From: Hypanus sabinus | Lineage: Eukaryota | Direction of reading: 5' to 3' | NCBI RefSeq assembly: GCF_030144855.1 | Contig: NC_082708.1 | Span: forward strand, 54,436,001-54,500,000 | Length of the DNA stretch: 64,000 nt | Shown: positions 4,843 to 54,464 of the stretch, piece by piece | How positions within the stretch are numbered: position 1 is the stretch's first letter | Layout: each line of letters starts with the position of its first letter | Position numbers and translations under genes: made by a program | Notes under the pieces: generated by a model | What the model saw: the letters and a program-made list of their open reading frames with translations, nothing else | Database searches by the model: none | Told to the model about the DNA's origin: nothing

Positions 4843-5254
4843 GCTCAGAATAATTTTGTAGCAAGCACATTATTCCTGAATGACACCAGAAAGTATTAGA
4901 AATAATCAATATCTCTGTTGCCATTTTCTCAAGTTGAAAGGGTCAACCTTAATGATTGATGACTTTTCTTAGTACTATAGCCAGTCTTCTCCTTTGATCT
5001 TCCTGTTAAATGAAGCATCTAAGCTCATGAAATATGCACTCATACACAACTTCAAAGAACTCTCCTAAAGAACATAAGATAAGGATCGGTTTATATGGCC
5101 ATATTAGTCCAAACCAGCCAAAGGGAGCATTACCTGATCAAGGGCCAATGTAGTGATATCGAGTAATAGCCTTCATGTATTTCAAAGCATAATAATGCAT
5201 AAACCCAATTAGGTACCTCCAAGCATCTCATCATCTCTATTTTTATTGGATGCA

Positions 5255-8960: not shown

Positions 8961-9599
8961 CTTGATATTTTCTTCTTGCATCTGCCTCTCTGTCTCAGCT
9001 ACATCAATGCTCTGTTTTTCTTCCTTTGCCTGGGTTGATGTTAATCATTAACTGTAATCAACCTCCTTGTATTTGTTTTCAATGTTTCAACTGCCGTGGT
9101 AATGTTAACCCTACCAGACATTGAGGTCTTTGATCCTCCGACGTACCATTATCCATTTACATTTCCGGCAAGGCAATAAAGTACACAATTTATTTAAAGC
9201 AGGACATGCAGAACATGTTCCAAAGATTTACAATGTTCTGCTCTGGTGAGGTTCAAGTGATTTAAGCTTTCCACAGGAAGTCTCTAAAACAAAAACTTTT
9301 TGCATGGATGTTTTTACCCAAGATCATCAAAATTTATCATCAAAATAAGTGCATCACTAAAATAGTTGCCTGGAGAGATGAACTGTAACCCATGGCTCAC
9401 TCACCTTGTTAAAACCTGTGCTCTGTGTGCTGTAGTCTGTTTTATCTGGAATCCTACAGCCAAGTGAGTTATATGAATTGCTGGAGGCTGTCTTCCCAAA
9501 AGCAAACACTAAAGATTTTCTTTCTTTAATAGCCCAACTATAATCTGCTCATTATCAGGTGATATCCCTAATCATAACAGTTTAATATAAAAATTAACA

Positions 9600-40306: not shown

Positions 40307-42349
40307 CTTCTAAATAATTCAGTACTAACCTATTCAATCTTCCCTTATAATTCATGTCCTCCAGACCTGGCAAAGTCCTCGTAAATTTTCTCTGCACTCT
40401 TTCAACCTTGTTTATATCTTTCCTCTAGGTAGGTGACCAAAACTGCACACAATACTCCAAATTAGGCAGCACAAATGTTTTACACAACTTCGACATAACA
40501 TCCCATTTCCTGTACTTAATATATTGATTTTTGAAGGCAATGTGCCAAAAGTTTTCTTTATGAACCTATCTATCCATGACACCACTCATTATGGACTTGT
40601 TCAACCACACTGCTCCATACCCTACAGTCACTGGTCTCACTGTTTAAGACCTACCCTGATTGGTCCTACTGAAGTGCAAAATCTCACACTTATTTGCATT
40701 AAATTCCATCTGCCATTTTTCAGCCCATTTTTCCAGCTGGGCCAGATCCTGCTGCAAGCTAGTGTAGCCTTCCTTGCTGTCCATTATACTGCTAATCTTG
40801 GTGTCATCCACAAGTTTGTTGATCTGGTTTACCACATTATCATCCAGATCATTGATATAGATGACAGACAACAACAAACCCAGCACCAATTACTGTGACA
40901 CACCACTAGTCACAGGACTCCAGTCAGAGAGGAACATATCTACTACCACTCTCTGGCTTCTCCCTCAAAGCCAATATCTAATCCAGTTTATTATCTCATC
41001 TTGAATGCCAGTGACTGGACCCTCTTGACCAACCTCCCTTGCAGGACTTTGTCAAGTGCCTTACTGAAGTCCACAAAGACAACAACCTCTGCTTTGCTTT
41101 CACCCATTTTCCTGGTAACTTCCTCAAAAAATTGCATAAGATTAGTTAAACAAGACCTACCATGCATGAAGCCATGCTGATTATCCTTAATCAGTCAAAA
41201 TACTTATATATCCGGTCCCTTAGAAAACCTTCCAATAACTTTCCCACAACTAAAGTCAAGCTCACCAGCCTATAATTTCCTGGTTTATGTTTAGAGCCTC
41301 TTTTAAACAGCGGAACAACATTGGCTATCTTCTAATTTGATGCCCACCCTCCTACACCAATTCCTTAGTCACATGTTAAACTTATAACTACTTCTGGCCT
41401 CACTAGCACGTGGCATGGGTAGCGATCTTGAGATCACAACCCTGGAGGTTCTGCCCTTTAATTTAGCACCTAACTCTGTGAACTCCTTTGACAGAAGCTC
41501 TTCTCTCATCCTACCCCTATCATTGATACCTACATGGACCACGGCTTCTGGCTGTTCACCCTCCCACTTAAGAAAGTTGAGGACTCATTTCAAGATGTCC
41601 CAGACCCTGGCACCCAGGAGGAAATATACCATCTGGGAATCTTGTTCTCACCCACAGAACCTCCTTTCTGTTCCCCTAACTAACGAATCCTCTATCACCA
41701 CAGCTCACCTCTTCTCCCCAACCCACCTTCTCTTCTAAGGCACAGAGCCAAACTCAGTGCCAGGGACCTGATCGCTGTGATTTTCCTCTGCTATGTCATC
41801 CCCGCTAACAGCATCCAAAGTAATATACCTGTTGTTGAAGGGGATGGCCACAAGAGTATCCTGCACTGGCTCCTTAACTCCTTTCTCCTTCCTGACTGTC
41901 ACTCAGTTTCCTGTATCTTGCACCTTGGGTGTAACTACCTCTCCGTATGTCCTATCTATCACCCTCTCAGCCTCTCGAATGATCTGGAATTCATTCAATT
42001 CCTGCTTCTACTCCTTAACATGGATTGTTGGAAGCTGCAGCTGGATGCACCTCACAGTTGTCCTCAGGGACACTGGAGGTCTCCCTGCCTTCCCACATCC
42101 TGGAAGAAGAACATTCTGTATCTGTTCTGTTCTAAGTGATCAAATGTAAAGTGCTGGTGGCAGAACCTTTACCTGCAGCTTTTTGTATTTGCTTTCTCTG
42201 ACTAAAGCCTCACCTTGCTGAAATCTCAAAGAACTAAATCCTCAAAATTTTCACTCTAACTCCGCCCACTTCAACGATGGCCAGTGCGATGATAGCTGCT
42301 TCATTTGCCTCTGCCTTCCTTTAATTTGTTCTTGCAAATCAATTCCAAA

Positions 42350-42585
42350 TGCTGACTGGTCGCTGGCCAAAGCTCCAAAAAACTACTGTGATTTGCTGTC
42401 TTTTCTGCTTGGTTAGAGAACTTGAGTGAAATTTCATCCTCTCAAGCTTCTGATCTCCCGACTGGTTGCTGGTCAAAGCTCCAAAAATTTGCCACGAGTG
42501 GCTGCCTTTTACATTCTGTAGCGAACCTGAATGAATTTCTGAGCTCCCAGGCTTCTGTTCTCCCGACTGGTCACTGGGCATAGCT
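42350..42585. repeat. ~105-bp tandem monomers (about 2.3 copies)
   Basis: gactggt..ctgg.ca.agct recurs at 42354, 42460 and 42565. Confidence 0.75.
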
Positions 42586-43955
42586 TTGCCATCTTCCCCA
42601 TTTTCACTAGCCTATAAACCCTCATTTTCTTTTGGAGGAATCTCTCCTCTGCAAATCTTTCTCTCATTTATGATGGCTCATACTAAAGGTTTTGATATAG
42701 TCAGTGATATGTGTGAATATTTACTTGGGCCATTGACTTCCAGCCTTCCTTAAACAGAACTTACAAGTCACCTCAATGCACTTTATACAATGAATTATAT
42801 TTTTAGTTGTTGTGGCTGGTGTTATGTTGACAAACAATGGTATTGCTAGTCATATCCTAACTGAAATGTGCCTTGGAGATGAATGTATCTGGTAAATTTG
42901 TTCATTCCAAAAGTACTAGAGGAATGGAAAAAGACTGCTGATAGTATTAATACTAACCTTCTCTTTCCTGTTCTTTTGAGGTTACTGTATTTTTCTTATT
43001 TTGTAATTTTCATTCTCTCTTTGCAATTCTAATGCTTCTTTTACGTCAAAAACATGAGAGAAATGTGAATATACAGTGTGGTGGTGGTGAACTTAAAAGA
43101 GTAGTACGGCTCCATTTAGGTTACTGAGAAAGATGAGGCGGATTGAAGAATTGCTACTAAAGACCATAAATACAATGACCCCTGGGCTGGTGGATATCCC
43201 AGGGAAAATTTGAAAGTCAAGCTGGTTAAACAGCATCTTTAAGTTGGCTCAATAAATGCTGTGAGTTCTATTTTTTCCCAAAGACAAAGGGGGCATTGAA
43301 ATGGTTTTAATCATTTGCACCATCAATTAGCTTAAGTGTTTCCAGCTGTGATTTACTGTCAGCCCACATTGTCAAAATCTTTTTATTTGCCACTGTGGCA
43401 GATCATTATTAACTCACACTGAAGTCAGGCCATTTTAGTTCATATTGAAATAGCACATATTTTGGCAACAAGCAAGTGATTAAAAAGAAAGCTTTGTAGT
43501 ACAATTTGTAATGAGGAGAATGTTCTGCGACGTCATCATTGTCTAACAGGATTACTGATGCACCATTCATCCGTAGAAACAGCCTGGGGATACTTTCTGG
43601 AGTCATTGTCTACTGAAGGAAGTGCAGCTGACAGCTGCCCAGTGGTTCCGCAGGTCATCTTCTGAAGCCACAACGATTTATTAGCTGGTGATGTTATGCA
43701 GTCTGCGGGAAAGGCATAACCTTTTGTTGCCCTCAGTGACGCTGGATGTATCATTTGTACCGGTGCCAGCATTAGCCTAAAGCAGCTGATGATGGAAAGC
43801 ATGCACTGTGCTGACTTTGGTTCTTTTGCAGTTGTCCACTGTGGGTGAGCTGCATTCTATACAGAGGCACCTGGCTCCTCATTTAAAACTTCTCATAACG
43901 AGGGATATGTAAGCCACGTGGTCACTGTGTCGTAATGTATAGGTTAATGTAGAGG

Positions 43956-44120
43956 AGGGTGCCTAGGGAGAGGTAGCAACCCTGGTGCCTTTTTCAGGGC
44001 AGCTCGTCCACCTTTGGTTCCCACCTGGCGCTGAGCTCTCACCTCTGGCTCCAAGTAGCTGTTACACGCACAGTGGCCACACCCTGGGAAACCGTCTCGG
44101 CAGATGGTCCAAACCCGGTG
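43956..44120 (+). ncRNA. Candidate variant HDV-like self-cleaving ribozyme at the element 5' end
   Basis: Manual fold: P1 AGGGUG/CACCCU followed by GG; P2 CACCUGG/CCCGGUG (6 of 7 pairs); P3 GAGC/GCUC; P4 ACCGUCU/AGAUGGU; CCAAA linker; non-canonical spacers. Confidence 0.4.
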
Positions 44121-45180
44121 AGGGTAGCTGACGGGTCTTCGACCCTCAGTGAGGTAGGGGATCTGTCTGTCCCAGCGTGTGAAGTCTGGCCCTGGCGGAT
44201 TGAGCGGAGGAGACCGATTAATGGTCCAACGGTCAAGAAGGCAGGCCAGCAGGCGTTGGTGGAGCGCTAAGAGCACGACAAGGCACTTAGACGTCCTGGT
44301 CATCCACTGCAGCAGGAGAAGTCTCCAGCCGTAACGGTTGCCCGTGCCACTGGATCAAGGTCTCTTCCACTGCAAGAGTGGGATTGCCCAGTGTCTGCTT
44401 AAAACTCCGTCACACACAGGTTTCTGTTGTGCGATTTTCACAGATGAACTGCACGATAGCAATAGTCTGTGAGGTAGTAGCGTTGGTCGGTACCATCTGA
44501 GGGGAATATTGCTCGTAGTGATATTTGGCAAGGTACACATCTCTAGAATTAGAAAATATGTGATAGCATTGCACCAGTGGTAGCTTTATGTGTGTTATCA
44601 TGCATTTTATAACACTACCCTAAAATAAGCATTTCTGAAAAGTGGCTAATATAAAGCACAACGTATATATTCAGCCGAGTGGTATTTTGTCATCAGTGAT
44701 CCCCCAACATTGAAATTTGTCACAGTGATAGCTGAGTTCATGCACTTTTCATCAAATGTTGGTATAAAATTCCACATTGAAAACCATGTCATTGGTGGCA
44801 CTCACAGTACAGTGGCCAATTTCAGTAGAGTGAATCATTACATTTTTAGAAAAAATATTTATCAATAAAAACCCTAGGACACATATAATCACACGGATTG
44901 TAGAGAATTTATTCAAGAATTTAAGTAAGTAATTACTTTTTGTATATATTCCATATCAACATCAGTTAGTATGTTACTCCACCCCCCTCCCAAAAGGTAA
45001 AAAACCTCATTTGGAGAGATTTCTGGAGCTTTATCAATATCATGATATTGTCCATATTGTTGTATCAAATTAAAACAATCTTAATCTTTTGTCGTAGCAT
45101 ATAGAATTACAGTACAATAATTCAAATGTGGCATTCCATACAGCCATAACCTAGGCCCCATTTGGTTGTAAAATGAATAA

Positions 45181-46779
45181 ATGAACCCACAGAAGGCTGC
45201 TGGACCAGACAACATCCCTGGTAGAGTGCTCAGAGGATGTGCAGACCAGCTAGCAGATGTTCTCACTGACATCTTCAACATCTCCCTCAGCAGCACCACC
45301 GTTCCAACGTGCTTCAAGGCCACCACCATCGTCCCCGTGCTGAAGAAGTCTTCAGTGTTCTGCCTAAGTGACTACTGTCCTGTTGCATTTACATCCATCA
45401 TCATGAAGTGTTTCGAGAGGCTCGTCATGAGGCATATCAAGACCCTGCTGCCCCCCTCACTGGACCCCCTGCAGTTTGCGTACTGTCCCAAACGCTCAAC
45501 AGATGACGCCATTGCCACCACCCTCCACCTGGCCCTCACCCATCTGGACAAAAAACATACGTTCAAATGCTGTTCATAGACTTCAGTTCAGCATTCAACA
45601 CAATCATCCCTCAGAAACTGATTGGAAAGCTGAGCCTACTGGGCCTGAACACCTCCCTCTGCAACTGAATCCCAGACTTCCTGACTGGGAGACCTCAGTC
45701 AGTCCGGATCGGGAGCAGCATCTCCAAGACCATCACACAGCGCGGGGGTCCCCCAGGGCTGTGTGCTCAGTCCACTGCTGTTCACTCTGCTGACCCATGA
45801 CTGTGCTGCAACACACAGCTCGAACCACATCATCAAGTTCGCTGATGACATGACCGTGGTGGGTCTCATCAGCAAGAACGACGAGTCAGCTTACAGAGAG
45901 GAGGTGCAGTGGCTAACGGACTGGTGCAGAGCCAACAACCTGTCTCTTAATGTGAACAAAAGAGATGGTTGTTGGCTTCAGGAGGGCACAGAGTGACCAC
46001 TCCCCGCTGAACATCGACGGCTCCTCGGTAGAGATTGTAAAGAGCACCAAATTTCTTGGTGTTCACCTGGCGGAGAATCTCACCTGGTCCCTTAACACCA
46101 GCTCCATAGCAAAGAAAGTCCAGCAGCGTCTCTACTTTCTGCAAAGGCTGAGGAAAGTCCATCTCCCACCCCCCCATCCTCACCACATTCTACAGGGGTT
46201 GTATTGAGAACATCCTGAGCAGCTGCATCACTGCCTGGTTCGGAAATTGCACCATCTCGGATCGCAAGAACCTGCAGTGGATAGTGAGGTCAGCTGAGAA
46301 GATCATCGGGGTCTCTCTTCCTGCCATCATGGACATTTACACTATACACTACATCCGCAAAGGAAACAGCATTATGAAGGACCCCACGCACCCTTCATGC
46401 AAACTCTTCTCCCTCCTGCCATCTGGGAAAAGGCACCAAAGTATTCGGGCTCTCACGACCGGACTATGTAACAGTTTCTTCCCCCAAGCTATCAGACTCC
46501 TCAATACCCAGAGCCTGGACTGACACCTTACTGCACTATTGTCTTGTTTATTATTTATTGTAATGCCTGCACTGTTTTGTGCACTTTATGCTGTCCTGGA
46601 TAGGTCTGTAGTCCAGTGTAGTTTTTTTTTCTGTGTTTTTTTTTACGTAGTTCAGTCTAGTTTTTGTACTGTGTTATGTAACACCATGGTCCTGAAAAAT
46701 GTTGTCTCATTTTTACTATGTACTATACCAGCAGTTATGGTTGAAATGACAATAAAAGTGACTTGACTTGACTTGACTT
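45181..46779 (+). mobile_element. 5'-truncated, comparatively intact Rex1/Babar LINE inside Academ
   Basis: [51 protein letters not shown]; stop at 46523; aataaa + (gactt)n tail; several frameshifts. Confidence 0.93.
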
Positions 46780-46828
46780 TAATCAAAGACTGCTTTCCAT
46801 ACTTTGTTTTCCATACTTTTGTAACCTA

Positions 46829-49000
46829 TTAATAATCATAATAATTTTCCAAGTCTTCCATGTCTTCATCTGAACTTTCCTCACTCTCTGAGGTGGATGC
46901 CTGGTTCTCACAGTCTGTCCGTCTACACATGTCAGTACACCTGAGGCCATTTGCAACACACACACATCTTGGGAGTGAACATTTTTTTGGACAGTTACAG
47001 GCCAGTAGATCCAGGACGGCATCGGGTGCTGGCTGGCCTTCCATCCAGTGCACCACCAACTGTTCAGCCTCCTCTTCTCTCTCCATCTTCCATCCTCTGC
47101 CAACAGGGCTTGGCATTTGTGGGTCCTTCTCCAAATATCCTCGCCATATAGCAGCCTGGTAGCGGGCTTGCTCTGCATGTTTTGTTAAGCGGTTCTTGCA
47201 CGGTGGGAGTTGACGACTTTCGATTTCAGCTTTTTAGGCACAGAAAAGGTGATACCTCATTGACCTTGGTGGTCGATGCGTTTGGGGCATACAGGAGACG
47301 TGAAATACCTCCAGTTTGTCCATCAGTTCTGGGGAGAGGTCCCATTCTTGATTGAACTCTAAGAATGTGTCTTGAGTTCCCCTGTTGCTGGTCAGAAGTT
47401 CTAGGGCACTTGTCTTCCCTTTACCTGCAAAAGTGCTTACAGTGCCACATCCCGTATATGCGTGCAATCCGATGAGAGCCCTACAAACCTCTATGCCAAC
47501 AGTGGCAGCAATGTTCCTGGTATCTACAAGCCACACTTCTGGAACAATGGGGCCTCAATCTTTTCACAAAATGCTAAAGGCATAATAAAGACATCTGTAT
47601 CTTCTGAGCAGATCACCACAGATTGGTATCCTTCTCTTGTGGTATGGGCAGCATGGAGAAGTAGGCGGCCAAAGGCTTCTTGTTGACCCTGAAGAGCTGA
47701 CACCTCCTCACTGTCTTGAGATGTGATTCTGTATTATTTGTCATTCACAGTTGCAAACAGAATCTTCTGTAGCTTTGCTCTGTACTCCGCCTTCCTCCAT
47801 TCATGGACCATGAAGCTAATGAGACTATTTTTGTTACTGACTTTGGTCAAGAAGCTCTTCCACTGCCTCACCATCTGTGTGCCTGTGATACCTTGCAACT
47901 CATGACCAGTCTCTTCACCCCGTAGAGATCTTTCACTATTCTTGATAGAGTTCTCCTTGTATGTGTCGAACACAACATCTGTTCTGCTACTCTGACTGTC
48001 TTCCCTCCGAGCCATACCCAGAACTATTGTGGCAACATCTCTGAAAGTAACTTGATCCCTTTCACTCTTTGGACCAAGTTCATTCCATCAACCACTGTAG
48101 CAGAGTTTCCTGGGAGTTGCTCTTCTACTGCTACATTTTTCTGCAAGGTTGTTGCTAAAGTAGCTTTATTTGTCTTTCTCAGCAATCCTTCTGGTGTGGA
48201 CAGGGCCCAGGGCAATGGTCCGAGGGGATGAGAAAGGATATCCTCCACACATAGACTGTGCCCTTGTGCCATCACTATGATGCGTCCAAACAAAGACCGG
48301 TCTGCTTTCAAGACAATCGCCCATTTGATTTCACTTCTCTCTTCTTACACACATCACTGAATGTTTTCAGCTTGTTGGTTTTCATTGGGTCATGGAATTT
48401 CTTTCCTGGCGGGTCTTCCTCTAGTCTCTCATACTTGAAGGTTGCATAACATTGCTCACCAATCTCGTACACCTTCAGCAGGTCAGAAGCAATGTCCTTG
48501 GGGGCTGCCTTTGCCGTAGAGATGCTAGTGAGGTCCCACTTCTCTGTAAATGGGTTGACCCATTCACTTTTGAGGCTAACCACTGCTGAAACTGCTCCCT
48601 CATCTTTCTGGATTCTTGTAGCTCCACATGACAAAGCTCTGATCTGTTGCCTTGCCCCATCTCCCTCAATTGTCCCAGGAATGCATTGCGGTGCTCAGCT
48701 GTTTTGTAGTTATGCTTGATAGCTCCAACATTCAGGCTGAACCGTGATGTGCCTCCAGGAGTCTGGTGTGTCTTTGTTCACTGTGGCTTCAATAGCCTAG
48801 TCCACAGGGATCTGCCCAAAGGGGTTGTTACTTGACAGCTGCACTGGGAATTGGCCAGTCGTGAAGGCCTCATACACAGAAGGATTCTTCTCTGGGAGGT
48901 TCATCATCCGAGCAAAGTAAGGGGACAGGTACCTGGCGTAATTCATTTTATCGTAGGCAAAGCATCATGGGATCGTGGCTCTTATAGCATGGAGGTTACC
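46829..49000 (-). pseudogene. Academ polyprotein remnant (C-part of transposase, XPG/PIN-like nuclease, Cys-rich zinc finger)
   Basis: AYDKMNYARY and IPVD*AIEATVNKD (48770-48960); LPWALSTPEGLLRKTNKA, VVDGMNLVQ, DVVFDTY, LLLHAAH..SEDTDVF, LHAYTGCGTVSTFAGKGK; LPPC..HA..ARYQAAIW; CNCPKKCSLPRCVCVANGLRCTDMC..CEN; multiple frameshifts and stops. Confidence 0.87.
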
Positions 49001-49189
49001 ATACAAGCTACCACTGCTGCAGTGCTATCACGTATTTTCTAGCACTAGGGATGTACACCTTGCCAAAAATCACTATAAGATTTATTCTTCCCAGATAGTA
49101 CCAGTGGCCCAAATTTGGGGTCCTGGCTCACAGACTACGTGTCTTCTTCGAAACCGAAGGATTATTACCAATGCCAATGTAGAGGTGAT

Positions 49190-49789: not shown

Positions 49790-50196
49790 GGATGAAACAG
49801 CCATGTGTCCACTTTGGGATATCACGTACTGTTTCCACTGTTTCTGCTGGGTATCTTTTCCCTAAAAGGGACGAGGTTCCCCAGATCGTCTCAAGGGCAC
49901 CATTTTCAGTGGTCAGGACTCCTGTGAGCTGGGGGGGAGGAGTACTATTGCATTGTTTAAAGCGTCTTTCAGAACATTTTTGAAATGGTTTCTATTGTCA
50001 ACCTGGTCGTCTCTTGCTGTGACCAAACAATGCAGCCTCTCCATCAGACCCAGCAGAGTATCATTACCGGTTATGGTCTGTGACAAAATGCTGTTCGCTA
50101 TTGTACCAGTAGGTTTGAGATTGGTACTGGGTTTATCTTTCCAGTGCTTTGGGGTGCTTGATCTGACTGAGGGGCTGGAGGGCGGGGCCAGACACT
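49790..50196 (-). mobile_element. Old RTE LINE 3' fragment (continues 53622-53870)
   Basis: Minus strand reads MVYQPAV across the Vingi TSD, then KHPKALER and ttcaaaaatgttctgaaagacgctttaaac (FKNVLKDALN), similar to the RTE C-terminus. Confidence 0.55.
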
Positions 50197-50815
50197 GCAG
50201 GCTGATTCATCCATAGCTTGGCACACCAGACAGCCAGCCACTCTAGTGTTGTTAGGTTGACATTGAGCAGGTCAGTGTCAGCTAGACCAGGTGAGGGTGG
50301 GCAGTTGCGCAGAACGTGCTCGATGTTCTGCACCCTTTCGCCACACTCACAGGATCCGCTGGTCTTCAAACCCCACTTCACCATATTGTCTCCCATCCCA
50401 CAAACTCCCGCTCTCACTCTGTTGAGAGTGCACCACTTCCGTCTGTCAGGCAGTGCCCCCGGGGTCTGGCAACGTTTCTGTGGGGTCTTGCACTGTGTTG
50501 TTTGCTGGGGTTGTGGCTTCTGTTTGTTGCCAGAGGTCAGTCCTGTATGTTTGGGGGGATGTTCCGTGCGGTAATTCCTCCACCACAGCAAAGCTTTTCC
50601 TCGATTTTAGGCGGTTGGAAACTGGCACATGATGATGTAGTGGGTGCCATGGATCCGAGTTCTGTTTACCTTTTTCAATTTTTGTTGTAGTGTGTCTTTG
50701 GATTTCTGCGGGAGCAATGCCTGTAAGTCTGTAAATGATGTTAGTGGGTGTGGGGCGCAGTGTGCCCGTGATTATTCGGGAGCAATGCCTGTAGGCCTGT
50801 AAATGATGTTAATGG

Positions 50816-51522
50816 TGTCATGTAGCCTGTGACCGGGTTACCGAACCAGCAGAAATGGAATACACATTGGAGTCTTGTATTACTGTAACTAATAGTGTTT
50901 ATTAGTAAACTAAGTAATAAGGTACTATAAAATGCAAATATATATAAAAACAGCTTAGCAATGGTATATACAGAAGTGTGGAAATAGGAATCAAAACCAA
51001 ACTCTTTCAAAGTCTAGGGGTAAATGGATAGTCCTACAATGGTGAAGAGTTCAGTTCAGTTTAGTTCAGGTTGAGTTAGTTCTGGTGTAACTTTGGAGAG
51101 AGGGAGAGGTGTTGCAGTTGCTGTTGAACCTTCAGTTATCTTCCTGTCCTGTTATGGTCACCGATTGTGATCCCGTACGACCGTTCTTCAGTGGTAGACC
51201 TGACTCCCAGGCGAGGGTGGACACACACACAAGTCCCCACCAGTTCACCTTCTCACACGGTGAGCCACTGATCGATTCCCCAAATCAATCCTCCAAACCC
51301 CCACCTTCACGTGGCTGCACAACGCTCTGTCAGTGTCCTGTGGCGTGTCTGCTGGTATCTTCGCAGACCTGCTTTTTATCCCCCCTGGTGGGGTACCAGC
51401 TGTCCATCAGGCCGTCCATCACCTGGTCCCACCTTGCTGTCTCAGCAAGAATCTTACAAGCAGGCAAAGAGGGTGTCCTTGGAGCAAAGGTAGACAGTCA
51501 GCTAAAGCCATAATAGTAAATC

Positions 51523-51592
<70 letters not shown>

Positions 51593-51704
51593 TGCAGCAG
51601 GATGCCTCCCCCCCTTCTTCTCTCTCTCTCTCTCTCTCTCATTAGCAGCATAGTTCACAGGGGGGTCAACTCTGGACCCCATCTCAGCTGGTTTACTCAT
51701 CACA
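50816..51704 (-). mobile_element. Solo LTR-like insertion (889 bp)
   Basis: TGTCATG..CATCACA termini; 4-bp TSD atgg / gtgg; tttatt near 50898 gives AATAAA on minus; left end resembles 56395. Confidence 0.75.
51526..51640. repeat. (CT)n microsatellites (51526-51589 and 51619-51640)
   Basis: Seen directly. Confidence 0.95.
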
Positions 51705-52437
51705 GTGGGTGTGGGGTGCAATGTGCACGTGATTATTCGGCAGACTTTGTTATGCAGTGGGTCTATTTTCTTCACATGGGCTGATCTGCCCCACACAGGT
51801 GCACAGTATTCTGCAGGTGCATAGCAGAGTGCTAGGGCAGTTGATCTAAGTGTGTGAGCATCGGCTCCCCATTTCGTGCCTGCTAATTTTTTCAAGAGAG
51901 AATTGCAAGAGCCAACTTTCCCTCGGAGTTTTTGGATGTGGGTGGCAAATGGGAGCGTCCTATCCAGTGTCACGCCCAGGTAGATTGGAGTTGAGTGGTG
52001 TTCGAGCTCCCTCCCACACCAGAAGATCTTGAGTTTCCAAGCTGCTTCTCGATTCCTCAGGTGGAATGCACACACTTGAGTTTCTGATGGATTTGGGTTC
52101 AGAGACCATTTTTCATAATACCGCTTCATTGCTTCGAGGACTGCTGTAAGTCGGACTTCAACTTCTGGGAAGGAGTTAGCTTGTGTTGCTATGCATAGGT
52201 CATCTGCATAGATAAACCTGCGTGTGTTAGGAAAGGTTGGTTGGTCGTTTGTGTGAACATTAAATAGTAGAGGCGCCAGGACTGATCCCTGTGGTAGTCC
52301 GTTCTTTTGTGGATGCCTCCTAATCTGAATTCCATTCATTTCTACATAAAATTTACGATTTTCTAGGAGGCTTATTATTACTTTGACTGTGGTTTCATTC
52401 ATTAACATTTTAGGTAAGTTTAGTAGAAGGCCTCTGT

Positions 52438-53326
52438 GGCTACATCCACACTACGCCAGATAAATCTGTAACTGAAGCTTTTTCTCTTCATTTTTACCCC
52501 CCGTCCACACTAAAACGGCATTTTTGCCCCCCAAAAGCGGAGCTTTTCAGAAACGCTTTCCAGGGTGGTTATTTTTGAAAATGCTGCTCGGGCAGATCAG
52601 TGTGGACGGGGTAACCGGAGAAATCTGAAAACACTGTCAGACGACAGCGTGCTATTTCATTGTTTTCCTGAACGCAACCTAACAATTTCAGAACAGACGG
52701 CAATGAGACTGAAGCCAGAAGAGTTAGTAATGTACTCACCAAATACTTTGACCCATAACTTACTGAATATATATGTATACTCACTTTGCCCTGTTTTCTG
52801 TCCTTGCTCGTATGAAGGTGGTTTACCTATTTATGCAAGTTCTTCTCTGACAATAGATGTGTAACAGCCTAATGTAACATTGTATGGAAATACGAGATAA
52901 TACTGATGCAGACATGTTTTATACATTCAACAAGGGGCTTTATTAATGCAACAGAGTTAGTCAGTTTTTCAATGTTCGTCGTCAGCCGGGTCAATCTATC
53001 TGTGAACTCCGTCAGTTGCCGCCGTATGCTCCAGTATTTGTTTTTTTTAGTTTTAAGTTCTCCTGCGCGAGAGCCAACAGCTGCCCATCGTTTAAGTTTT
53101 TCTAGTCTGGAACTGTACAAACGCGCACTTCTACGCAAGATTCAACACCAAACACGTCGCTGGTTTTCGGTAGATGTGTCCTGTGCATGCGCAGGAGGAG
53201 GAGATTCACTGAAATCTCCATTTCAGTGTGGATAGAGATATTTTCAAAAACGCATAGTGTGGATGCCTATCGTTTTTACGTGAAACCAGCATTTTCAAAA
53301 TTATCTGGTCTAGTGTGGATGTAGCC
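52438..53326. mobile_element. PIF/Harbinger-type MITE (889 bp)
   Basis: 26-bp TIRs ggctacatccacactacgccagataa / ttatctggtctagtgtggatgtagcc (2 mismatches); 3-bp TSD tgt; removing it restores Vingi AYDTVNHRGLL. Confidence 0.88.
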
Positions 53327-54464
53327 TGTGATTCACAGTGTCATATGCTGCTGTTAAGTCAATGAATACTGCCCCTGTAATTTGTTGCATTTCAAAGCTA
53401 TCCTCGATATACTGGGTTAAGTTCAGGTCTTGACTGCCAGCAAGAGCAGCCTGGCCTGAACCCGGCTTGGTCTGCTGTTAAAAGATCTTCGACTAAGGGG
53501 GATTTTCTTTTTAGTATGAGTCTCTTGTAGAGTTTATAGAGAGTGCAGAGCAAGGAAATCGGTCGGTAATTTTTAGGAACGTTGGGGTTTTTGTTGGGTT
53601 TTAGGAGAGCAGCAGGCTGATAGACCATGAGGTTTGAGAACTTGCTTTTCACGCACTCTTCCTCAGACAATCGAAGGCTGTGCTGGTACTCTGAAGGTGA
53701 TGGTTAACTCAGCATTGATATCCATCGGCAGTGGTTCCTGAGACATGTGGAGTGTTCACATTTTCCAAGGCTTCATAGTGCACCTTGACCATCAGAGTGA
53801 GAGGCAGTCGAAGGAGGGTAGGTCAGTCAGGGCCAATTTTGGATGTCAAGTGTACCAGTTATTTTCAGTGAATTAGTCAGTGATGGCTTGGAGCTTGATT
53901 CTGAGTGCACACATATATAACTGCCATTTCTAAATTACAGTTTTAGAAATTGACTGAAATTGACCTTGGTTTGGAATGAAATAGTTTGAACAGTTTCCCA
54001 CAGGTCCTGAAGATTAGCTGTTGGAGTTGAGGTGCAGGGTTGGGTGGAGAAAGACTGAGGAAGATGTCGGGGTAACGATGCAGCTGAACTTACATTGATC
54101 TTCACAGTGATCAGACTCATTGTGGATTCAATACTATTTTATAAAGTTCCATCCAGAGCACTAAATTCATTGGTGGCCATTCTAGAACTGCTTTTGGACT
54201 CCTGTTATAGACACAGATTAGATTTCTCGTAGATGGTTGATGACAGTGCTGAGTAAGAAGCACCTTCCTTGTTTAAGGCATGAAGTTACAAGGACTTGTC
54301 AATGCAGACCATCACCCCTTAGCTCTGAATATGAAAATCACATTACACAAAAAAAGTCCCCCCGTAATGGCTAAATGTTTTCTGGCTTCAGTAGTACAGT
54401 TGTGAGCAGTAAAGTCCCTTGTGTGCATTTAGCAATAGAATTGGAATTGATTTATTATTGTCAA

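What the first reader, a model, noticed from the sequence alone, without database searches (positions are those of the whole stretch)
43956..44120. TSD-defined 5' end of an RTE-derived SINE coincides with a variant HDV-like ribozyme fold
Seen: the 10-bp TSD places the element start at 43956 (or 43955), exactly where AGGGUG begins. It pairs with CACCCU (44080-44085), which is followed by GG, a 7-bp hairpin (44091-44108), CCAAA, and CCCGGUG pairing with CACCUGG (44022-44028). This is the P1 / P1.1 / P4 / J4/2 / P2 order of HDV-type ribozymes. Known: HDV-like ribozymes define the 5' ends of several non-LTR retrotransposons, including RTE-clade ones. Unusual: P3 (GAGC/GCUC, 11-nt loop) is separated from the P1 3' strand by ~28 nt holding an extra hairpin (GCUGU..ACAGU), which canonical descriptors do not allow. 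Inference: a structurally expanded HDV-like ribozyme kept in a non-autonomous element.
Basis: partly seen in the sequence, partly recalled or inferred. Interest (0 to 1): 0.72.

Follow-up and report, generated by a model that had tools for sequence, protein, structure and literature searches.

The report
Worn HDV-like ribozyme heading a retroposon
This stretch is a decayed copy of a hepatitis-delta-type self-cutting RNA fold at the first base of a short, gene-less offshoot of an RTE-like jumping gene; the trick is known, but this family carries an extra hairpin inside the catalytic loop that standard ribozyme models miss.

Summary
A 10-bp direct repeat (43946-55 / 49176-85) puts the element's first base at 43956. 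That base starts the only 6-mer in 530 upstream bases that can pair with CACCCU 44080-85.

- P2 is 44035-45 / 44115-25.
- P3 is UGGC 44046-49 / GCCA 44076-79.
- The "extra hairpin" (44058-74) lies inside L3. P3 abuts P1 with no linker, as in HDV.

Two full-length APE+RT LINEs on environmental contigs (L004, L002; ORFs 31% identical) carry the same fold:
- P2 keeps 11 pairs, five of them through compensatory changes.
- P1 is GGGGUGU/ACACCCC and starts where their homology starts.

The window element shares L004's 5' UTR and 3' tail and has no ORF or tRNA head. It is an internally deleted LINE derivative, not a true SINE.

This copy is decayed: two P2 pairs are broken, and G108 and U88 are changed. 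No Rfam model hits any copy. Cleavage is untested.

The scan already found this ribozyme family at other places in this genome (seven notes). I rate it a new structural variant of a known kind.

The parts
43946..43955 (+). left target-site duplication AATGTAGAGG
   Evidence: Exact 10-mer, repeated at 49176-85.
43956..43961 (+). P1 5' strand AGGGUG; base 43956 is the predicted cleavage product +1 and the element's first base
   Evidence: Only 6-mer in 530 upstream bases that can pair with 44080-85. L004 and L002 have GGGGUGU at the start of their homology.
43962..44034 (+). J1/2, a long joining region with a hairpin at 43962-43998 (like the P1.2 peripheral domain)
   Evidence: Folds of J1/2. 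In L004 and L002 it is one long hairpin with z = -2.8 and -2.9; here z = 0.28, so it is decayed or weaker.
44035..44045 (+). P2 5' strand GCUCUCACCUC; the last two bases are mispaired in this copy (family majority has G at 44045)
   Evidence: 11 pairs, five with changes on both sides.
44046..44049 (+). P3 5' strand UGGC
   Evidence: Invariant in window, L004 and L002 and pairs with 44076-79. Also part of the unconstrained MFE fold.
44050..44075 (+). L3: U50, then C51 C52 (P1.1), AAGUA, inserted hairpin GCUGU/ACAGU at 44058-62 / 44070-74, then G75 (U50.G75 corresponds to HDV U20.G25)
   Evidence: The stem is kept in all three sequences with one-sided changes only, while the loop differs in sequence and length, 7 to 10 nt. 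Family-majority letters 44070 G and 44074 C keep or improve the pairs.
44076..44079 (+). P3 3' strand GCCA, directly abutting P1 3' strand
44080..44085 (+). P1 3' strand CACCCU (family majority and relatives have CACCCC)
44086..44087 (+). GG of P1.1, pairing with C52 and C51
   Evidence: Invariant in all three sequences. No covariation is possible.
44088..44108 (+). J1/4 (GAA; relatives have UAA) and the P4 hairpin 44091-97 / 44102-08
   Evidence: one compensatory and two one-sided changes. The outer A-U pair is not kept in the relatives.
44109..44114 (+). J4/2 CCAAAC; C44109 is the candidate catalytic cytosine and is preceded in relatives by G (G-C-N-A-A as in HDV G74-C75-G-A-A). Here 44108 is U.
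   Evidence: HDV numbering is from my own knowledge and PMC13635239.
44115..44125 (+). P2 3' strand CCGGUGAGGGU (family majority has A at 44116)
44126..44462 (+). Rest of the LINE 5' UTR-derived body of the non-autonomous element
   Evidence: 44027-44393 aligns with L004 5043-5408 at 71% identity. No ORF. Family depth falls after 44311.
44463..49137 (.). Nested DNA transposon that interrupts the element (not part of the ribozyme)
   Evidence: Inverted terminal match 44489-44590 / 49102-49000. A different repeat family starts near 44460. The class (Academ, note s1-198061) was not tested.
49138..49175 (+). 3' tail of the element, shared with the LINE
   Evidence: 49140-49164 matches L004 9006-9030, right after the ORF stop at 9004, at 84% identity.
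49176..49185 (+). right target-site duplication AATGTAGAGG

Best explanation
The stretch 43956-44125 is a mutated relic of an HDV-like (nested double-pseudoknot) self-cleaving ribozyme. It forms the 5' end of a roughly 545-bp internally deleted, ORF-less derivative of an RTE-like APE+RT LINE.

Inferred mechanism in active family members:
1. The element has no promoter-defined start and is transcribed as part of a longer host or read-through RNA.
2. The ribozyme folds co-transcriptionally. P1 pairs the first 6-7 bases with 44079/80-85. A structured J1/2 domain pinches P1 and P2 together. P2 and P3 stack. P1.1 forms between C51, C52 and G87, G86.
3. The cytosine after P4 (C44109) and a metal ion near the U50.G75 pair cut the backbone just 5' of base 43956.
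4. That cut gives the element RNA its exact 5' end. The LINE protein then copies the RNA into new sites through the shared 3' tail.

The family differs from canonical HDV-like ribozymes in that L3 is an internal loop closed by an extra 5-bp helix. This window's copy is old: two related organisms share the insertion. It has lost two P2 pairs and changed two otherwise invariant core bases, so it is probably inactive.
For: Shown:
- The TSD fixes the first base at 43956.
- 43956-61 is the unique complement of the P1 3' strand.
- All HDV elements occur in the canonical order. The family-majority letters give zero-nucleotide P2|P3 and P3|P1 junctions.
- A descriptor anchored at base 1 matches 3 of 18,289 shuffles.
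- Family-majority letters from two related organisms repair or strengthen pairs: 44045 G and 44116 A complete an 11-bp P2, 44105 C gives G-C in P4, and 44074 C gives G-C in the L3 hairpin.
- Two full-length APE+RT LINEs, L004 and L002 (ORFs 31% identical), hold the same core (CM hits of 77 and 65 bits).
- On their alignment 93% of cells are paired against 46% or less when partners are slid. P2 has five compensatory pairs and P4 has one. P3, P1.1, U50, G75 and C109 are invariant.
- P1 is 7 of 7 in both LINEs and starts exactly where L004-L002 similarity starts: 9 of the first 9 bases match, against 12 of 30 upstream.
- The window has A1-U85 where the LINEs have G1-C85, a change on both sides.
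- L004 and L002 pass a strict descriptor: P1 of 7 bp, P2 of at least 9 bp, linkers of at most 1 nt.
- The window element matches L004's 5' UTR and its 3' tail.

From the literature:
- HDV-like ribozymes cleave at the 5' junction of RTE, R4, L1 and R2 elements (PMC3774820, PMC6765202).
- Structured J1/2 activates large HDV-like ribozymes (PMC4908430).
- The L3 U.G reverse wobble is conserved (PMC3774820, PMC13635239).
Against: - No cleavage assay and no RNA 5'-end data exist for any copy.
- No Rfam HDV-type model matches the window copy or the intact LINEs.
- The cleavage-site pair is A-U here and G-C in the LINEs, not the G.U wobble of HDV and CPEB3.
- L3 is about 26-29 nt with a helix, which is unprecedented in what I could search.
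- Only three independent sequences were available. All compensatory changes in P2 separate L002 from the other two, so that is a single lineage contrast.
- P3 and P1.1 never vary, so they have no covariation support.
- The thousand-copy family in related organisms aligns to this copy only from about 43988 onward. The family's own P1 5' strand and its 5'-end pile-up could not be read, and the noisy 30-nt overhang consensus there does not show GGGGUG.
- The MFE of the whole stretch is no better than shuffles (z = 0.04).
- The 19-mer used to fish L004 and L002 lies in the conserved core, so its identity is partly ascertainment.
Confidence: 0.8

Rival explanations
1. The conserved fold is a structured but non-catalytic 5' UTR module of the LINE, for example a translation-initiation, protein-binding or internal-promoter element. 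On this view its likeness to HDV ribozymes is superficial, and the 5' end is set by transcription initiation rather than self-cleavage.
For: No HDV model in Rfam matches. The G.U wobble at the cut site is missing. L3 is far longer than any described. The nested part (P2, P3, hairpin, P4) is simply the MFE fold, a Y-shaped domain. L1Tc shows that the first 77 nt of a LINE can be promoter and ribozyme at once (PMC3383444).
Against: A generic Y-shaped domain would not be expected to show the following features:
- The single-stranded linker after P3 is complementary to the element's first 6-7 bases in three independent elements.
- CC and GG sit exactly where P1.1 needs them.
- U...G flanks L3.
- G-C-N-A-A follows P4.
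- The junctions have zero linker.
A DNA-level promoter would not give compensatory changes in P2.
Confidence: 0.13
2. One reading: P2 = 44022-28 / 44114-20, P3 = GAGC/GCUC at 44033-36 / 44048-51, and a 28-nt spacer with a hairpin lies between P3 and the P1 3' strand.
For: Those complementarities exist in this copy.
Against: L002 keeps 3 of 7 pairs of that P2, and L004 and L002 keep 2 and 3 of 4 pairs of that P3. The family-majority C at 44033 breaks that P3. GAGC overlaps the covarying P2 5' strand. The model needs an 18-nt P2-P3 linker and a 28-nt P3-P1 spacer that breaks the helical stacking on which the HDV core depends.
Confidence: 0.03
3. The match is a chance resemblance in a GC-rich repeat, and the 5' end at 43956 is an arbitrary 5' truncation point.
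For: Non-LTR copies are often 5' truncated. The related-species family does not align over 43956-43987. The permissive 'core only' descriptor hits 6.9% of shuffles.
Against: The anchored descriptor hits 0.016% of shuffles. The same fold and the same P1 start occur in two LINEs with 31% identical ORFs.
Confidence: 0.03

Closest known systems
HDV-like ribozymes at the 5' ends of non-LTR retrotransposons (R2, R4/Dong, L1Tc, Baggins, RTE; Ruminski et al. 2011 as cited in PMC6765202 and PMC3774820)
   Same: A double-pseudoknot fold whose first P1 base is the element's first base. It processes the element out of a co-transcript. The parent here is an APE+RT LINE of RTE-like architecture.
   Different: L3 here is an internal loop closed by an extra 5-bp helix, about 26-29 nt in place of about 7-8. 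The cleavage-site pair is G-C or A-U, not G.U. No Rfam model recognises it. Activity is untested.
drz-Agam-2 family of mosquito (large HDV-like ribozymes with a structured J1/2, P1.2 domain; PMC4908430)
   Same: A long J1/2 of 73-100 nt folds into a stable hairpin between P1 and P2. That paper shows such a domain accelerates cleavage by 'pinching' P1 and P2 together.
   Different: The J1/2 sequences are unrelated. This window's copy has a weaker J1/2 fold. The Agam-2 paper I read does not mention an L3 insertion.
SIDEs of R2 (short internally deleted elements: 5' ribozyme plus 3' end; PMC3414825) and NARTc of L1Tc (PMC3383444)
   Same: A non-autonomous element made of the LINE's ribozyme-bearing 5' end joined to the LINE's 3' end. 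It is presumably mobilised in trans and has no pol III head.
   Different: A different LINE clade. It inserts genome-wide with a 10-bp TSD rather than at a specific rDNA site. It keeps about 270 nt of 5' UTR beyond the ribozyme.
Genomic HDV ribozyme
   Same: The order of helices and the P1.1 C-G pairs match. The U.G pair flanking L3 corresponds to U20.G25 (PMC13635239). G-C-N-A-A follows P4, with C75 as the catalytic base (numbering from my own knowledge).
   Different: There is no sequence homology outside those few bases. P2 is much longer (11 bp). J1/2 is long. A helix is inserted in L3.

Membership tests
HDV-like self-cleaving ribozyme | Nested double pseudoknot in the order P1-J1/2-P2-P3-L3-P3'-P1'-P1.1-P4-J4/2-P2' | tested here: met
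   Window copy with relaxed linkers. L004 and L002 with strict settings. 93% of cells paired against 46% or less when slid.
HDV-like self-cleaving ribozyme | Helices supported by compensatory changes | tested here: met
   P2 has 5 pairs changed on both sides, P4 has 1, and P1's first pair is G-C versus A-U. P3 and P1.1 are invariant, so uninformative. Only three sequences were available.
HDV-like self-cleaving ribozyme | P1.1: two pairs between L3 and the bases right after the P1 3' strand | tested here: met
   C51, C52 with G87, G86 are present and invariant in all three sequences.
HDV-like self-cleaving ribozyme | Conserved U and G in L3 forming a reverse wobble next to the active site (PMC3774820, PMC13635239) | tested here: met
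   U44050 directly follows P3 5' and G44075 directly precedes P3 3'. Both are invariant. The geometry itself is not testable here.
HDV-like self-cleaving ribozyme | Cytosine at the start of J4/2 followed by adenosines | tested here: met
   C44109 then N-A-A-A is kept in the window, the family majority, L004 and L002.
HDV-like self-cleaving ribozyme | G.U wobble at the cleavage-site end of P1 (as in HDV and CPEB3) | tested here: not met
   A-U in the window; G-C in L004, L002 and the family majority.
HDV-like self-cleaving ribozyme | Short closed L3 loop, as in descriptors and Rfam models | tested here: not met
   L3 is 26-29 nt and holds a 5-bp helix. No HDV-type Rfam hit even at E up to 10.
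HDV-like self-cleaving ribozyme | Site-specific self-cleavage 5' of the first P1 base | not testable with these tools
   There is only positional evidence: the TSD-defined start and the start of homology between L004 and L002.
RTE-clade LINE derivative | Parent is a LINE with one long APE+RT ORF of about 1,000-1,100 aa and a very short 3' UTR | tested here: met
   L004 ORF is 1,090 aa and L002 ORF is 1,042 aa, both with Exo_endo_phos and RVT_1. The window tail matches L004 just after its stop codon.
RTE-clade LINE derivative | Phylogenetic placement of the RT within the RTE clade | not tested
   No reference RT set was on hand. Sources give no clade name for the relatives.
SINE in the strict sense | Head derived from tRNA, 7SL or 5S with a pol III promoter | tested here: not met
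   No tRNA-like gene in 43800-44500. No 7SL/5S hit in the Rfam scans. The head is the LINE 5' UTR.
SIDE-type (internally deleted) non-autonomous LINE derivative | LINE 5' end joined to LINE 3' end, no ORF, flanked by a TSD | tested here: met

The most novel reading that the evidence does not exclude
HDV-like ribozymes whose catalytic loop L3 is closed by an extra helix ('P3.1') and whose cut-site pair is G-C may form a large class absent from Rfam 15 and from the papers I could search. They would head RTE-like LINEs and their gene-less offshoots. In sharks the related-species data suggest roughly 500 to 2,700 copies per genome. The class reaches elements whose proteins are only 31% identical. 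The extra helix would be a functional module, for example a docking site for the element's protein or a folding switch that times cleavage.
Probability: 0.55. Interest if true: 0.65.

Novelty: new variant of a known kind. Interest (0 to 1): 0.5.

Why it matters
Ribozyme-headed LINEs are known. Current searches for HDV-like ribozymes, however, rely on descriptors and covariance models with a short L3, and none of them sees this family, even in intact elements. If the fold cleaves, three things follow:
- The HDV catalytic core tolerates a helix inserted into its active-site loop and a Watson-Crick pair at the cut site. That bears on how the metal site and L3 are built.
- Vertebrate genomes may hold thousands of unannotated HDV-type ribozymes.
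- There is a simple explanation for how these promoter-less LINEs and their short parasites obtain precise 5' ends.

For this particular locus the consequence is small: it is an old, interrupted, mutated copy.

Tried and rejected
- Rfam at permissive thresholds on 42000-46000, on 43930-44140 alone, and on L002 plus L004 gave no HDV-type hit.
- Plain MFE folding of 43956-44125 was no better than shuffles. It is uninformative for a pseudoknot.
- There is no second copy in the window, by blastn or by CM R1 with filters off.
- I translated both an ORF on the minus strand and an open + frame across the region to fish spurious ORFs of other copies. Neither gave protein hits.
- Family 20-22-mers from 44036-44059 found nothing in metagenome, genome or viral contigs.
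- The core 19-mer found 7 metagenome loci, of which 3 are real (L002 and L003 are one locus). All 7 hits in viral and genome contigs are chance matches; the three I read (L011, L013, L014) lie in bacterial genes.
- The search for related loci with the LINE protein alignment found nothing in viral contigs.
The 5' ends of the 1,746 ORF relatives could not be read.
- One raw-read run (X21) laid no reads.
- The TSD of L004 was not resolved. A 9-mer repeat at 4918 / 9265 lies beyond the tail homology and may be chance.
- My own interim 9-bp P2 with a 3-nt linker was replaced by the 11-bp P2 once the family-majority letters were seen.
- Two papers (Ruminski 2011; Webb and Luptak 2011) are not held. 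The claim that an L3 helix is undescribed therefore rests on full-text searches only.

Full report
**Observation.** AGGGTG is at 43956-61 and CACCCT at 44080-85, followed by GG. A 7-bp hairpin lies at 44091-97 / 44102-08, then CCAAA at 44109-13. CCCGGTG 44114-20 faces CACCTGG 44022-28 with six pairs and one C.U mismatch.

The 10-mer AATGTAGAGG occurs exactly twice on the + strand, at 43946-55 and 49176-85. The insertion unit is therefore 43956-49175. It is split by a nested DNA transposon; an inverted match between 44489-44590 and 49102-49000 and a switch to another repeat family near 44460 mark it.

43956-61 is the only 6-mer in the 530 bases upstream of the core that can pair with 44080-85, even with G.U allowed.

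**What the fold really is.** I laid Logan contigs of two related organisms on the stretch at 80% likeness.
- Read depth suggests hundreds to a few thousand copies over about 43988-44311.
- The orthologous single-copy contigs of both organisms reach into the element, so the insertion is old.
- The family-majority letters differ from this copy at positions that mostly repair helices. 44045 C>G and 44116 C>A extend a helix GCUCUCACCUG (44035-45) / CAGGUGAGGGU (44115-25) to 11 bp. 44105 T>C turns a G.U into G-C in P4. 44074 T>C does the same in the "extra" hairpin.

With these letters the architecture becomes canonical:
- P2 (44035-45) runs straight into P3 (UGGC 44046-49).
- P3's 3' strand (GCCA 44076-79) runs straight into the P1 3' strand (44080-85).
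- L3 opens with U-C-C and ends with G.
- C51 and C52 face G87 and G86 (P1.1).
- P4 is followed by (G)-C-C-A-A-A.

The hairpin 44058-74 therefore sits inside L3 and turns that loop into an internal loop. I had already read this scan's earlier notes, which speak of an extra hairpin in L3 in the same genome, before working this out. They primed the idea; the tests below are my own.

**Independent copies.** A 19-mer from the family-majority core found three real loci among JGI/NCBI metagenome contigs. These are L004 and L002; L003 is the same locus as L002. Hits in viral and prokaryote collections were chance matches; those I read lie in bacterial genes.
- L004 and L002 are full-length LINEs with intact ORFs of 1,090 and 1,042 aa. 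Both carry an AP-endonuclease and a reverse-transcriptase domain.
- The two ORFs are only 31% identical.

On the model-based alignment of the three cores, my structure has 93% of cells paired against 28-46% when partners are slid by 1-3 columns.
- P2 keeps all 11 pairs in L002, through five changes on both sides and three on one side.
- P4 has one compensatory change.
- The L3 helix keeps 5 of 5 pairs in all three, while its loop changes in sequence and length.
- P3, P1.1, U50, G75 and the C after P4 never vary.

Caveats:
- Only three independent sequences were available.
- All P2 double changes separate L002 from the other two.
- The alignment was fitted to the model.
- The 19-mer bait lies inside the 25-nt block that is identical in L004 and L002, so that identity is partly ascertainment.

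**P1 and the 5' end.** In L004 and L002 the only upstream 6-mers able to pair with CACCCC are GGGGTG at L004 4941 (and again at 4950) and at L002 507. P1 is 7 of 7 there, GGGGUGU/ACACCCC.
- Similarity between the two LINEs begins exactly at that G: 9 of the first 9 bases match, against 12 of 30 upstream.
- In the window the TSD puts the first base at the equivalent A. The first pair is A-U where the LINEs and the family majority have G-C, a change on both sides.
- A permissive HDV descriptor allowing a long L3, anchored at base 1, matches the window copy but only 3 of 18,289 dinucleotide shuffles. With P1 allowed anywhere it matches 80, and with the core alone 1,265.
- L004 and L002 also pass a strict version.

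What I could not show is a pile-up of 5' ends in the shark family itself. Family contigs align to this copy only from about 43988, with several conserved but divergent 5' variants.

**What the element is.** 44027-44393 aligns with the 5' UTR of L004 (5043-5408, 71% identity). 49140-49164 aligns with L004 9006-9030, directly after its stop codon (84% identity).
- The window element has no ORF and no tRNA-like head.
- It is an internally deleted LINE derivative: ribozyme-bearing 5' UTR plus 3' tail. This matches the SIDEs of R2 (PMC3414825) and NARTc of L1Tc (PMC3383444), not a SINE in the strict sense.
- The RTE label fits the parent's architecture: one APE+RT ORF, a tiny 3' UTR and no poly(A). 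I did not test it by phylogeny.

**How it most likely works (inferred).** Promoter-less copies are transcribed within longer RNAs, and the ribozyme cuts itself free at +1. That defines the RNA 5' end that is later copied by target-primed reverse transcription.

The long J1/2 folds into a stable hairpin in L004 and L002 (z = -2.8 and -2.9). In mosquito ribozymes such a domain speeds cleavage by bringing P1 and P2 together (PMC4908430). HDV-like ribozymes at RTE, R4, L1 and R2 5' junctions are established (PMC3774820, PMC6765202).

This window's copy is a fossil:
- Two P2 pairs next to P3 are broken (U44.C116 and C45.C115).
- The G before the catalytic C is U (44108).
- The conserved U of J1/4 is G (44088).
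- The element is interrupted by a transposon.

**Comparison and novelty.** The fold meets the topological and core-nucleotide criteria of HDV-like ribozymes but fails three features:
- There is no G.U wobble at the cut site.
- L3 is 26-29 nt with a helix.
- No Rfam HDV-type model hits any copy, even at E up to 10.

I found no description of an L3 helix in the full-text library. Two key papers were not held. The same ribozyme family was already reported by this scan at seven other places in this genome, and those reports reached the same reading.

I rate it a new structural variant of a known kind. It is of moderate interest for the family and low interest for this decayed locus.

Noticed in passing
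L004:4941-4957: The P1 5' strand occurs twice in tandem (GGGGTGTAT then GGGGTGTG). Either copy could pair with ACACCCC, so this LINE has two possible cut sites 9 nt apart.
   Followed up: partly
L004:4927-4940 and L004:9006-9066; window 49165-49175: The flank just 5' of L004's first base ends in TAACCAATA. This resembles the element's own 3' end (window TTACCAATGCC; L004 CTACCAAG). L004's tail also holds two copies of ATCGAAGGACTACCAA. It may be a head-to-tail insertion next to an older tail.
   Followed up: no
window 44027-44034; L004:5043-5050; L002:604-611: GCACUCA(G/A) just 5' of P2 is kept in the family majority, L004 and L002, although the rest of J1/2 cannot be aligned. Its role is unknown.
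   Followed up: no
window 44463-49137: A nested DNA transposon with about 100-bp imperfect terminal inverted repeats (44489-44590 / 49102-49000, 81% identity). It holds a LINE RT fragment at 45181-45579.
   Followed up: partly
window 50133-53670 (-): A decayed LINE of another clade: RVT_1 (51521-52408) followed by a zf-RVT-like C-terminal motif (50133-50591), and a YRPISLL-type N-terminal RT piece (53398-53670). It is unrelated to the ribozyme family.
   Followed up: partly
alignment A4 (LINE ORFs), C-terminus: The ORF relatives share a C-terminal CPxCGRxCxSRxGLxSHxRxH zinc-finger-like motif. No Pfam hit covered it.
   Followed up: no
window 43980-44311 in run X16: A small run guessed to be RNA from related organism A holds contigs of the family, including a 929-nt contig running on past 44311. 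It may be transcription, or it may be DNA in the library.
   Followed up: no
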